In this document: positions 796-1,642 of the stretch, in pieces
Numbering within the stretch: the stretch's first letter is position 1
Layout: each line of letters starts with the position of its first letter
Source of the DNA: Fonticula alba ATCC 38817
Taxonomy: Eukaryota; Protista; Nucleariida
Assembly: GCA_000388065.2 (NCBI GenBank)
Contig: KB932209.1
Length of the DNA: 53,393 nt
Direction: 5' to 3' (one strand)
Program-made: the position numbers and the translations under genes
Notes under the pieces: model-generated
Databases searched by the model: none
Seen by the model: only the letters and a program-made list of their open reading frames with translations
What the model was told of the DNA's origin: nothing

Positions 796-1642
796 ATGGC
801 TGTGTGCGTCGCCCTCCATCTCCTCGCCTCCTTGCGCTCCTGCTCCCTGCCACATCTATCCTCATCCCTCAAATCCGCCCGCTCCCTCCCTCTCTGTCTG
901 TCCCGCCCTAACCCCCCCCCTCCTCCTTTCCTCCGCCACTGGACGGCAACCACACAGCGAAGAGAACGTGTTCACTGTCAAGGCTCAGCCCTACACTCTC
1001 TCTTCCCAGAGCTGGGAGTCCGCCACCTCGAACATCATCTCGGTTGGCTTTTGGTTTGACCCCTCCGACAACACCACTCGCATCGTGGCTATGGACGGCG
1101 GTGTGGCCAAGATCAACTCCCCCATCACCCCGGGCATGACCTTTCTCCTGCCGAGCCACACCTTCGGCCAGTGGTTCTGCGACGTGTCGCAGGTGACTCA
1201 CGGCCTGAACTTCACCAGCGTCCAGGATGCCCGCCAGTTTGCGGACTGCTTCGCTGACGCGGCCGAGGGTCGTAAGCCCACCGTCAAGGATGGCGCCGCT
1301 CAGCCGGCCATGAGTGCCCCTGCTCCGGGGATGGGTGCCTCGCCTGATGGTGCGCTCCCCTTCCCCTCCCTTTCTTTGCATAGCCCCCCTCCCGAGGCCT
1401 TGTAAGCGGTCCGGGCCCGACCCGCAAGGCCGGGGAGTCCGCACTTGCACACACGCAGCAAGACGCGAAACTGACCCTCATCCCGATTCCCATGGCATAC
1501 GCATATACACACACACACACATATATACACATACATGTGTGTATGAAAATAGCTCACGGCATGCAGCAGCCAAAGCAGGAGCAGGTCTCCCCCTCGGGCC
1601 AGGTCAGCTCCCTGACCAGCTCCTTCGGCGGCATGCACCTGA

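What the first reader, a model, noticed from the sequence alone, without database searches (positions are those of the whole stretch)
958..1260. Homer EVH1 with natural Asn at the Gly89 position and Pro at Thr70
Seen: gapless alignment to Homer1 residues 57-90 ends in HGLNF where animal Homer has YGLGF; the W24, F74 and Q76 equivalents are kept. Established: Gly89 characterises class II (PPxxF-binding) Homer EVH1, Ena/VASP and WASP class I domains have Asn there (GLNF), and G89N is used as a ligand-binding-impaired Homer mutant. Inference: this protist Homer may have a hybrid or ancestral ligand specificity bridging class I and class II EVH1 domains.
Basis: partly seen in the sequence, partly recalled or inferred. 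Interest (0 to 1): 0.72.

Follow-up and report, generated by a model that had tools for sequence, protein, structure and literature searches.

The report
Fonticula Homer-like scaffold with Asn89
A slime-mould relative of fungi (Fonticula alba) encodes a Homer-type scaffold protein whose proline-binding domain naturally carries the Asn that abolishes ligand binding when engineered into animal Homer. At least 13 related sequences share this residue, so it looks like an early form of Homer rather than a one-off oddity.

Summary
Window 796-2282 (+) is a five-exon Fonticula alba gene (H696_05232, annotated only as a WH1-domain protein). [quoted passage not shown]

- **EVH1 affinity.** The EVH1 matches Homer1/2/3 far better than ENAH (about 60 against 23 bits). 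It reads HGLNF where animals have YGLGF.
- **Contact residues.** W24, F74 and Q76 are kept. T70, V85 and G89 are Pro, Thr and Asn. Position 78 is Phe.
- **Coiled coil.** It carries the Homer-specific box (LKxALAxxxANxxxW), so the whole protein is Homer-like, not only the EVH1.
- **Not unique.** Two unnamed groups of environmental relatives share Asn89, Pro70 and a hydrophobic residue at 78. An unnamed EVH1-SH3-CC Homer has Asn89, and Syssomonas Homer has Gln89. Choanoflagellate, Capsaspora and animal Homers have Gly.
- **Phylogeny.** EVH1-only trees separate holozoan Homers (about 80% bootstrap) but do not root the Asn-type group firmly.
- **Reading.** An early-branching Homer with an intact polyproline groove and a closed Phe pocket. 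Altered or ancestral specificity is plausible but untested.
- **Literature.** Published work restricts Homer to animals, choanoflagellates and Capsaspora.

The parts
796..803 (+). Exon 1: ATG plus 5 bases (Met-Ala and the first two bases of Val3). The donor GTGCGT follows.
   Evidence: The spliced model gives 266 aa identical to XP_009497368.1 / P0001.
958..1349 (+). Exon 2: the whole EVH1/WH1 domain (residues 4-105, at 959-1264) and the start of the linker. Acceptor cacag, donor GTGCGC.
   Evidence: Pfam WH1 E = 6.4e-11. Homer EVH1 chains E about 1e-15. AF2 model pLDDT 95.2. Foldseek top 8 hits are Homer1/2/3 EVH1.
1013..1015 (+). Trp22 codon, equivalent to Homer1 W24 (polyproline groove); kept.
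1151..1153 (+). Pro68 codon, at Homer1 contact residue T70; changed. Pro is shared by the Asn-type relatives.
   Evidence: T70 is listed as a ligand contact in PMC13502648.
1163..1177 (+). F-G-Q-W-F, equivalent to Homer1 F74 G75 Q76 W77 A78. The groove residues and the Homer-type Gly75 are kept. Position 78 is Phe (Ala in Homer1, Arg in ENAH, Glu in Capsaspora).
   Evidence: Roles of these positions are given in PMC11237882.
1196..1213 (+). T-H-G-L-N-F, equivalent to Homer1 V85 Y86 G87 L88 G89 F90. Asn87 (AAC, 1208-1210) sits at the Gly89 pocket position.
1553..1725 (+). Exon 3: Gln-rich, predicted disordered linker.
   Evidence: The single-sequence AF2 model has low pLDDT and no secondary structure for residues 106-187.
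1878..1931 (+). Exon 4: start of the C-terminal helix / coiled coil (ARIKELQAQVNQLTMDNQ).
   Evidence: Continuous helix over residues 188-264 with pLDDT above 90.
2109..2282 (+). Exon 5: the Homer coiled-coil box DKLKKALAENTANANLWQSQVAQLEAANAELS (2127-2222), the C-terminal tail ...FAEFQKTFASMSMG and the stop codon.
   Evidence: BLASTP of the last 76 aa: Syssomonas Homer 8e-8, P0124 9e-6, animal Homer P0016 2e-6. An HMM of the box built from 28 holozoan Homers scores 20.5 bits, against a maximum of 12.4 for 2000 shuffles.

Best explanation
This is an early-branching ('stem-type') member of the Homer scaffold family in Fonticula alba, a holomycotan.

**Shown.**
- The architecture is an N-terminal EVH1, a disordered Gln-rich linker and a roughly 75-residue C-terminal helix.
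- The helix carries the Homer-specific coiled-coil box.

**Inferred from established knowledge of Homer.**
- The coiled coil multimerises the protein.
- Two or more EVH1 domains can then cross-link partners that carry proline-rich motifs.

**Binding site (shown from sequence).**
- The polyproline-II groove is intact: Tyr at 14, Trp24, Phe74, Gln76 and Trp77.
- All three other contact residues listed for Homer1 differ. Gly89, which forms the pocket for the Phe of PPxxF, is Asn. T70 is Pro and V85 is Thr.
- The small residue at position 78 is a bulky Phe.

**Consequence (inferred).**
- The domain still binds proline-rich peptides.
- It cannot dock a C-terminal Phe the way animal Homer does.
- Its motif is therefore probably Pro-rich with a different, possibly N-terminal, hydrophobic anchor. 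That is closer to the [LF]PPPP preference measured for Dictyostelium VASP than to PPxxF.

**Evolution (inferred).** Asn89 is conserved in all close relatives and in Ena/VASP. It is most simply read as the ancestral state, with Gly89 a later holozoan change.
For: **Identity and gene model.**

**EVH1 is on the Homer side.**
- PDB phmmer: Homer about 60 bits, ENAH 23 bits.
- Pairwise bits: 61.7 (Homer1) and 61.1 (Didymoeca Homer) against 25.2 (ENAH) and 24.2 (ddVASP).
- Foldseek: top 8 hits are Homer EVH1, rmsd 1.0-2.6 A (seven of them 1.0-1.4), TM 0.85-0.90. ENAH follows at rmsd 1.7-2.0 A.
- Gly75 ('FGQW') is shared with Homers, whereas the three Ena/VASP sequences compared have His.

**The C-terminus is homologous to Homer.**. 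The long helix covers residues 188-264.

**No Ena/VASP features.** There is no VASP_tetra hit and no Pro-rich tract.

**Binding-site census.** One search gives the residues. Their roles come from PMC11237882, PMC13502648 and PMC8789275.

**G89N kills binding in Homer1.**

**Group-wide conservation.**
- Motif census of the 150 best hits: 13 have Asn at position 89 (7 GLNF, 6 GLNL).
- Among 116 near-complete EVH1 sequences: 100 Gly, 15 Asn, 1 Gln. The 15 include the Ena/VASP references and P0124.
- All Asn-type relatives have Tyr14, Leu16 and a hydrophobic residue at 78.

**Measured precedent.** Dictyostelium VASP EVH1, which has Asn89, prefers [LF]PPPP.
Against: - No binding data exist for this protein or its relatives.
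- Dictyostelium VASP EVH1, despite Asn89, still showed weak sensitivity to loss of Phe at motif position +4. A closed pocket therefore does not strictly exclude a contribution from a C-terminal aromatic residue.
- The other changes (Pro70, Thr85, His86) could reshape the pocket and compensate.
- The polarity (Asn ancestral) rests on a weakly resolved EVH1 tree. Monophyly of the Asn-type group is 83% with ENAH and ddVASP as outgroup. It falls to 7-39% when the unnamed true VASP P0136 is added.
- The taxonomic origin of the relatives is unknown.
- The AF2 and Foldseek result is biased, because the input alignment was mostly Homer sequences.
Confidence: 0.55

Rival explanations
1. It is an ordinary Homer orthologue that still recognises PPxxF-type ligands. 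On this view Asn89 is accommodated by the accompanying changes (Pro70, Thr85, His86), so there is no real shift in specificity.
For: The groove residues W24, F74 and Q76 are kept and the architecture is Homer-like. ddVASP EVH1, with Asn89, retains slight sensitivity to the +4 Phe. Several pocket residues changed together, which could reflect compensation.
Against: G89N alone abolishes mGluR5 and Shank binding in Homer1. Modelling aromatic residues into the Asn90 site of ENAH gives severe clashes. Swapping four residues, including N90G, was enough to move ENAH to Homer-like preferences. All three other contact residues listed for Homer1 (T70, V85, G89) differ here, and Gly89 forms the Phe pocket.
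Confidence: 0.2
2. Asn89 is a secondary reversal in the Fonticula lineage and its relatives. On this view the first Homer already had Gly89 and bound PPxxF, so the protein says nothing about the ancestral state.
For: The basal EVH1 topology is poorly supported. Position 89 is labile in holozoan protists: Gly in Capsaspora, Asn in P0124, Gln in Syssomonas. Pro70 and the hydrophobic residue at 78 are clearly derived features of the group, which shows that its binding site has evolved.
Against: The three Ena/VASP sequences compared as outgroup have Asn. Every member of both Asn-type groups has Asn. The only named Gly-bearing lineages are Capsaspora, choanoflagellates and animals. One Asn-to-Gly change is more parsimonious.
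Confidence: 0.22
3. It is not a Homer by descent. On this view an Ena/VASP-lineage EVH1 lost its Pro-rich and EVH2 regions and independently acquired a coiled coil, giving a convergent architecture.
For: The Fonticula EVH1 scores 51.5 bits against the unnamed true VASP P0136, not far below its 61.7 bits against Homer1. Adding P0136 destabilises the Asn-type group in the tree. Asn89 is the Ena/VASP state.
Against: The C-terminal box LKxALAxxxANxxxW and the tail are homologous to those of holozoan Homers. Gly75, Leu16 and the loop lengths are Homer-like. There is no VASP_tetra domain or poly-Pro tract. Scores against ENAH and ddVASP are low.
Confidence: 0.07

Closest known systems
Homer family of animals, choanoflagellates and Capsaspora (Homer1-3, SrHomer, coHomer)
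   Same: The architecture is EVH1, disordered linker and C-terminal coiled coil. The EVH1 is closest to Homer in sequence and predicted fold. W24, F74, G75, Q76 and W77 are kept. The Homer coiled-coil box and C-terminal tail are present.
   Different: Positions 89, 70, 85 and 78 are Asn, Pro, Thr and Phe instead of Gly, Thr, Val and Ala. Positions 14 and 16 are Tyr and Leu instead of Phe and Ile. There is one copy of the coiled-coil box rather than two, and no long leucine-zipper extension (266 aa in total). The organism is in Holomycota, where Homer has been reported as not detected (PMC4137706).
Dictyostelium VASP EVH1 (ddEVH1) as characterised by Singer, Ramos and Keating 2024
   Same: It has Asn at position 89, so the Phe pocket is occluded. 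It lacks an Arg-based Ena/VASP pocket and has an aromatic residue at position 14. Its binding site is described as a blend of both families.
   Different: ddVASP is a true Ena/VASP protein with an EVH2 region. It has Tyr16 and His75, and is about equally distant from both families: 35% identity to Ena/VASP EVH1 and 31% to Homer EVH1, and 66.6 bits against ENAH versus 48.0 against Homer1. The Fonticula protein has Homer architecture, Leu16 and Gly75, and scores much higher against Homer.
Engineered Homer1 G89N
   Same: It has the same residue at the same position, in a Homer-type EVH1.
   Different: G89N is a single change in an animal background and abolishes mGluR5 and Shank binding. Here Asn is natural, is conserved across a group of relatives, and is accompanied by changes at positions 70, 78 and 85.
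Holozoan protist Homers without Gly89: Syssomonas multiformis EP00128_P009676 (P0143) and the unnamed EVH1-SH3-CC protein P0124
   Same: They have Homer architecture and the coiled-coil box, with a non-Gly residue at position 89: Gln in P0143 and Asn in P0124.
   Different: They fall inside the holozoan Homer clade (76-82% bootstrap). They have Phe14, Ile16 and Glu78, and lack Pro70.

Membership tests
Homer family (by descent and architecture) | N-terminal EVH1/WH1 domain | tested here: met
   Pfam WH1 E = 6.4e-11, 42.6 bits against a cut-off of 22.4. AF2 model pLDDT 95.2 with an EVH1 fold.
Homer family (by descent and architecture) | EVH1 closer to Homer than to other EVH1 classes | tested here: met
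   About 60 bits against Homer1/2/3, 23 bits against ENAH and 20 against VASP in the PDB search. Pairwise: 61.7 and 61.1 bits against 25.2 and 24.2. Foldseek top 8 hits are Homer. Caveat: 51.5 bits against the unnamed VASP P0136.
Homer family (by descent and architecture) | C-terminal coiled coil carrying the conserved Homer box | tested here: met
   Helix over residues 188-264. BLASTP gives 8e-8, 9e-6 and 2e-6 against Syssomonas, P0124 and an animal Homer. The box HMM scores 20.5 bits, against a maximum of 12.4 for shuffles and 8.8 for real coiled-coil decoys.
Homer family (by descent and architecture) | Groups with Homer in a phylogeny | tested here: inconclusive
   NJ with bootstrap places it sister to the holozoan Homer clade. 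Basal nodes have 34-54% support, and the result depends on the outgroup.
Homer family (by descent and architecture) | The four ligand-binding residues W24, F74, Q76 and G89 (Burkhardt 2014) | tested here: not met
   W24, F74 and Q76 are kept. G89 is Asn.
Class II (PPxxF-binding) EVH1 | Gly at position 89, which forms the Phe pocket | tested here: not met
   Asn, AAC at 1208-1210. Role of Gly89: PMC11237882 and PMC8789275.
Class II (PPxxF-binding) EVH1 | Contact residues T70 and V85 | tested here: not met
   Pro and Thr. The contact list comes from PMC13502648.
Class II (PPxxF-binding) EVH1 | Binds PPxxF peptides | not testable with these tools
   This needs ITC, BLI or peptide arrays.
Ena/VASP | EVH1 plus Pro-rich region plus EVH2 with tetramerisation domain | tested here: not met
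   No VASP_tetra hit and no [FLWY]PPPP or poly-Pro tract. As a positive control, P0136 does hit VASP_tetra.
Ena/VASP | Specificity residues Tyr16, His75, Arg81 and Asn90 | tested here: not met
   Only Asn is shared. The Fonticula protein has Leu16, Gly75 and Phe78.

The most novel reading that the evidence does not exclude
Homer is older than the split between animals and fungi. Its original EVH1 had an Ena/VASP-like closed Phe pocket (Asn89). On this reading the scaffold architecture (EVH1 plus the Homer coiled coil) came first. PPxxF recognition was a later holozoan innovation, gained by Asn89 to Gly together with Thr70 and Val85. The Fonticula protein and its relatives would then be living representatives of the pre-switch state, and the specificity switch could be tested directly.
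Probability: 0.4. Interest if true: 0.7.

Novelty: new variant of a known kind. Interest (0 to 1): 0.58.

Why it matters
Homer is a textbook postsynaptic scaffold, and its origin is used to discuss how synaptic machinery was assembled. Published work places it only in animals, choanoflagellates and Capsaspora. That work reports it as not found in Fungi, Apusozoa, Ichthyosporea or Dictyostelids (PMC4137706). A full-length Homer-type protein in a holomycotan would move the family's origin to the opisthokont root, or earlier.

Homer and Ena/VASP are also a model pair for how paralogous peptide-binding domains diverge in specificity (PMC11237882). That work had to rely on an amoebal VASP as a stand-in for the ancestor. 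A natural, conserved Homer lineage with Asn89, Pro70 and a hydrophobic residue at 78 supplies an intermediate on the Homer side. It would allow a simple forward test (N87G, or the triple change) of how the PPxxF pocket arose.

Tried and rejected
- **Word-indexed protein search with the EVH1.** It found nothing, because the query shares no 5-residue words with relatives. I replaced it with the exhaustive HMMER search.
- **Profile search with alignment A1.** It returned only the 'GLNL' group, not the closest relatives. It did open that group's genomic contigs.
- **Identifying the organisms behind the relatives.**
  - Cluster look-ups gave no names for either group.
  - Run and assembly accessions were not found in the paper library.
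  - A phosphoglucomutase neighbour on L001 has its best named hits in fungi at about 60% identity. That is not diagnostic.
- **Biopython bootstrap.** It timed out, so I re-implemented it with numpy.
- **A regular expression for the coiled-coil box.** The first attempt was too strict and failed. I replaced it with BLASTP and an HMM.
- **Pocket geometry.** The structure tool returns no coordinates, so occlusion by Asn87 could not be measured.
- **Ena/VASP, WASP or other EVH1 class.** Considered and rejected on scores and architecture.
- **Sequencing error at codon 87.** Rejected, because all relatives have Asn.
- **Pfam scan of the other long ORFs in the window.** Only a thioredoxin-domain gene and an MFS transporter were found. 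Neither is related to the finding.

Full report
**1. What is at the coordinates**

The window is GC-rich (about 65%) eukaryotic DNA.

- Exons: 796-803, 958-1349, 1553-1725, 1878-1931 and 2109-2282.
- All four donors read GTGCG[TC], and all acceptors end in AG.
- The spliced CDS is 801 nt and encodes 266 aa.
- An exhaustive HMMER search returned a protein identical over the 111-residue EVH1 query (P0001, 266 aa). Its printed sequence equals my spliced model.
- The cluster look-up names it XP_009497368.1 / KCV68314.1, H696_05232, 'hypothetical protein' of Fonticula alba. UniProt A0A058Z203 calls it 'WH1 domain-containing protein'.

The window is therefore Fonticula alba, a cellular slime mould on the fungal side of Opisthokonta (Holomycota).

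**2. Check of the observation**

- phmmer against all PDB chains puts seven Homer1/2/3 EVH1 entries first (E = 1.2e-15 to 3.5e-15, about 60 bits). ENAH/Mena follows at about 23 bits, then VASP and EVL at 17-20 bits.
- Pfam gives WH1 at E = 6.4e-11.
- The printed alignment is gapless over Homer1 57-90 and ends hGLNF against yGLGF. One 3-residue gap lies upstream, between I16 and W24.
- In Homer1 numbering, W24, F74 and Q76 are kept, T70 is Pro and G89 is Asn.

**3.

- Gly89 forms the Homer pocket that takes the Phe of PPxxF. Asn90 of ENAH obstructs the equivalent site (PMC11237882).
- Modelling aromatic residues into the ENAH site gives severe clashes (PMC8789275).
- Homer1 G89N, like W24A, fails to bind mGluR5 (PMC2172804). 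It also fails to restore synaptic Shank3 (PMC13034877).
- Homer1 ligand contacts are listed as G89, V85, Q76, F74, T70 and W24 (PMC13502648).
- Four positions (14, 16, 78/81 and 89/90) were enough to convert ENAH to Homer-like preferences.

**4. The rest of the protein**

- After the EVH1 (residues 4-105) comes a Gln-rich segment with no predicted structure.
- Residues 188-264 form a single long helix with pLDDT above 90, even in a single-sequence AF2 run.
- This C-terminus is specifically Homer-like:
  - The stretch DKLKKALAENTANANLWQSQVAQLEAANAELS matches the conserved box of animal Homers (…[29 protein letters not shown]…).
  - The tail …FAEFQKTFASM matches the C-termini of protist Homers.
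  - BLASTP of the last 76 aa gives 8e-8 against Syssomonas Homer, 9e-6 against P0124 and 2e-6 against an animal Homer.
  - An HMM of the box built only from 28 holozoan Homers scores the Fonticula protein at 20.5 bits. The maximum was 12.4 bits for 2000 shuffles of the same 76 aa, and 8.8 bits for real coiled-coil decoys.
- There is no VASP tetramerisation domain, no poly-Pro tract and no internal PPxxF motif.

The whole protein is therefore Homer-type, not only its EVH1.

**5. Relatives**

The HMMER scan of 1.84 billion representative proteins found 201 proteins at E <= 1e-3.

The closest are unnamed metagenome or transcriptome sequences at 47-49% identity (P0002, P0003, P0004), with further relatives at 42-47% (P0005/P0151, P0012, P0015). 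All read [FY]GLNF and all but one read PS[ED]TFGQW. Most full-length members end in the same coiled-coil box and tail.

A second group reads YGLNL and FVQW (P0006, P0008, P0018, P0049, P0062/P0153, P0076 and others).

- It lies on intron-containing genomic contigs.
- On L001 the gene continues into an exon with the same box (…IDKLKVAFQQNASNVSIWKQQLQTYQDVNDQLSAKMNELSELYEKFGEILKRV).
- The box HMM scores that exon at 34.9 bits.

Census of binding-site positions (Homer1 numbering):

| Sequence | 14 | 16 | 70 | 75 | 78 | 85 | 89 |
|---|---|---|---|---|---|---|---|
| Homer1 (human) | F | I | T | G | A | V | G |
| Oscarella (sponge) | F | I | T | G | R | I | G |
| Didymoeca (choanoflagellate) | F | I | T | G | T | V | G |
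| Capsaspora coHomer | F | L | S | G | E | L | G |
| P0124 (unnamed EVH1-SH3-CC) | F | I | S | G | E | V | N |
| Syssomonas | F | I | N | G | E | I | Q |
| Fonticula | Y | L | P | G | F | T | N |
| First group (GLNF) | Y | L | P (S in P0015) | G | L/M/I | L | N |
| Second group (GLNL) | Y | L | P | V | F | L | N |
| ENAH (human) | M | Y | A | H | R | V | N |
| Dictyostelium VASP | F | Y | A | H | T | H | N |

- The Capsaspora, ENAH, Homer1 and Dictyostelium VASP sequences come from Table S4 of PMC11237882.
- Taxon names for Didymoeca, Oscarella and Syssomonas come from EukProt labels.
- Among 116 near-complete EVH1 sequences, position 89 is Gly in 100, Asn in 15 and Gln in 1.

Asn89 and Pro70 are therefore features of a whole group of relatives, under apparent constraint. 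They are not an accident of one gene.

**6. Phylogeny**

I built neighbour-joining trees (Kimura-corrected distances, 128 match columns, 200-300 bootstraps).

- The trees put Fonticula and both groups of relatives as sister to a holozoan Homer clade. That clade contains animals, Didymoeca, Capsaspora, P0124 and Syssomonas (76-82% with P0136 in the outgroup; 52% with ENAH and Dictyostelium VASP alone).
- The basal nodes are weak (34-54%).
- With ENAH and Dictyostelium VASP as the outgroup, the Asn-type group is monophyletic in 83% of replicates.
- Adding P0136 drops this to 7-39%. P0136 is an unnamed but genuine Ena/VASP, with a VASP_tetra hit.
- P0136's EVH1 is unusually close to the Fonticula EVH1 (51.5 bits).

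The honest reading is this. The EVH1 of this group sits between holozoan Homers and Ena/VASP and leans to Homer. Every member scores 49-77 bits against Homer1 and the choanoflagellate (Didymoeca) Homer, against 25-47 bits for Ena/VASP. Family assignment rests mainly on the shared coiled-coil box and on Gly75.

**7. Structure**

- AF2 on a 36-sequence alignment gives a confident EVH1 fold (pLDDT 95.2).
- Foldseek ranks eight Homer EVH1 structures first (TM 0.85-0.90, rmsd 1.0-2.6 A, seven of them 1.0-1.4). ENAH follows (TM 0.82-0.84, rmsd 1.7-2.0 A).
- The input alignment was mostly Homer sequences, so this is supportive rather than independent evidence.
- No coordinates are returned, so pocket occlusion could not be measured.

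**8. Mechanism**

*Shown:* a Homer-type architecture; an intact polyproline groove; and changes at all three other Homer1 contact residues (T70, V85, G89), among them Gly89, which forms the Phe pocket, plus a bulky hydrophobic residue at 78.

*Inferred:*
- The protein is a multivalent adaptor that cross-links proline-rich partners.
- It probably cannot use a C-terminal Phe anchor as animal Homer does.
- The nearest measured precedent is Dictyostelium VASP EVH1. It has Asn89 and no Arg-based Ena/VASP pocket, and it prefers [LF]PPPP with only weak sensitivity to the +4 Phe.
- A hydrophobic residue at position 78, conserved across both groups of relatives, may supply a different anchor site. This is speculation.

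*Polarity:* Asn occurs in the Ena/VASP sequences compared, in both groups of relatives and in one holozoan protist Homer. Gly occurs only in Capsaspora, choanoflagellates and animals. One Asn-to-Gly change is the simplest history, but the tree cannot prove it.

**9. Comparison with the literature**

- Burkhardt et al. [quoted passage not shown] They searched Fungi, Apusozoa, Ichthyosporea and Dictyostelids without success.
- Singer et al. 2024 date the Homer and Ena/VASP split only as pre-choanoflagellate, and used Dictyostelium VASP as a proxy for the ancestor.
- Full-text searches pairing Homer with Fonticula, Holomycota or Ichthyosporea, and a six-term search that also included Syssomonas, Corallochytrium and nucleariids, found nothing relevant.
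- A fungal genomics paper reports VASP as lost in the fungal ancestor and does not mention Homer.

Within the searchable library, a holomycotan Homer and a natural Asn89 Homer lineage are undescribed. I cannot exclude a report in literature outside that library, or an entry in family databases.

**10. Verdict**

- The finding is a new variant of a known family, with moderate to good interest. It extends the phyletic range of Homer and offers natural intermediates for a well-studied specificity switch.
- The functional claim is untested, and the taxonomy of the supporting relatives is unknown.

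Noticed in passing
window 1-160: Long homopolymer runs of C and G (tens of bases each) lie at the very start of the window. This is probably a low-complexity or poorly assembled region upstream of the gene.
   Followed up: no
window 48741-49592: A (TG)n microsatellite of about 95 bases runs into a 758-base run of N (48835-49592). This assembly gap explains the apparent GC dip at 48-50 kb.
   Followed up: yes
window 804-957, 1350-1552, 1726-1877, 1932-2108: All four introns of the gene start GTGCG[TC]. Three of them contain (CA)n or (GC)n microsatellites, at about 1507-1520, 1836-1856 and 2018-2046.
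   Followed up: partly
window 3266-3748 (+) and 49632-51065 (-): The neighbouring genes are a secreted-looking thioredoxin-domain protein with a WCGVC motif (Pfam Thioredoxin, 3.7e-8) and an MFS_2 sugar-type transporter (3.1e-25). Neither has any evident link to the Homer-like gene.
   Followed up: partly
P0136 / P0152 (JGI metagenome contigs, about 1 kb): This is an unnamed genuine Ena/VASP (EVH1, poly-Pro, VASP_tetra). Its EVH1 has Homer-like loop lengths and scores 51.5 bits against the Fonticula EVH1. It destabilises the tree and may be the Ena/VASP of a related protist.
   Followed up: partly
P0124 (L008, Logan SRR13370223): This Homer has an EVH1-SH3-coiled-coil architecture, as reported for Capsaspora, and Glu78. 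However, it has Asn at position 89 (YGVNF) where Capsaspora has Gly. Position 89 therefore varies even among close holozoan relatives.
   Followed up: partly
P0143 (Syssomonas multiformis EP00128_P009676): A Homer from Pluriformea, a lineage not in the published distribution of Homer. It has Gln at position 89 and Ser at the otherwise near-invariant Gln76 (FGSW).
   Followed up: partly
L001 3001-3956 (ENA ERZ4204489 NODE_759): This is a 'GLNL/FVQW' Homer-like gene on a compact genome with short introns, next to phosphoglucomutase and anoctamin genes. The organism is unknown. The best named phosphoglucomutase hits are fungal, at about 60% identity.
   Followed up: partly
P0148 (1559 aa) and P0150 (1016 aa), ENA metagenome contigs: These proteins have 4 and 7 separate EVH1-like stretches respectively. 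This is an unusual tandem-EVH1 architecture.
   Followed up: no
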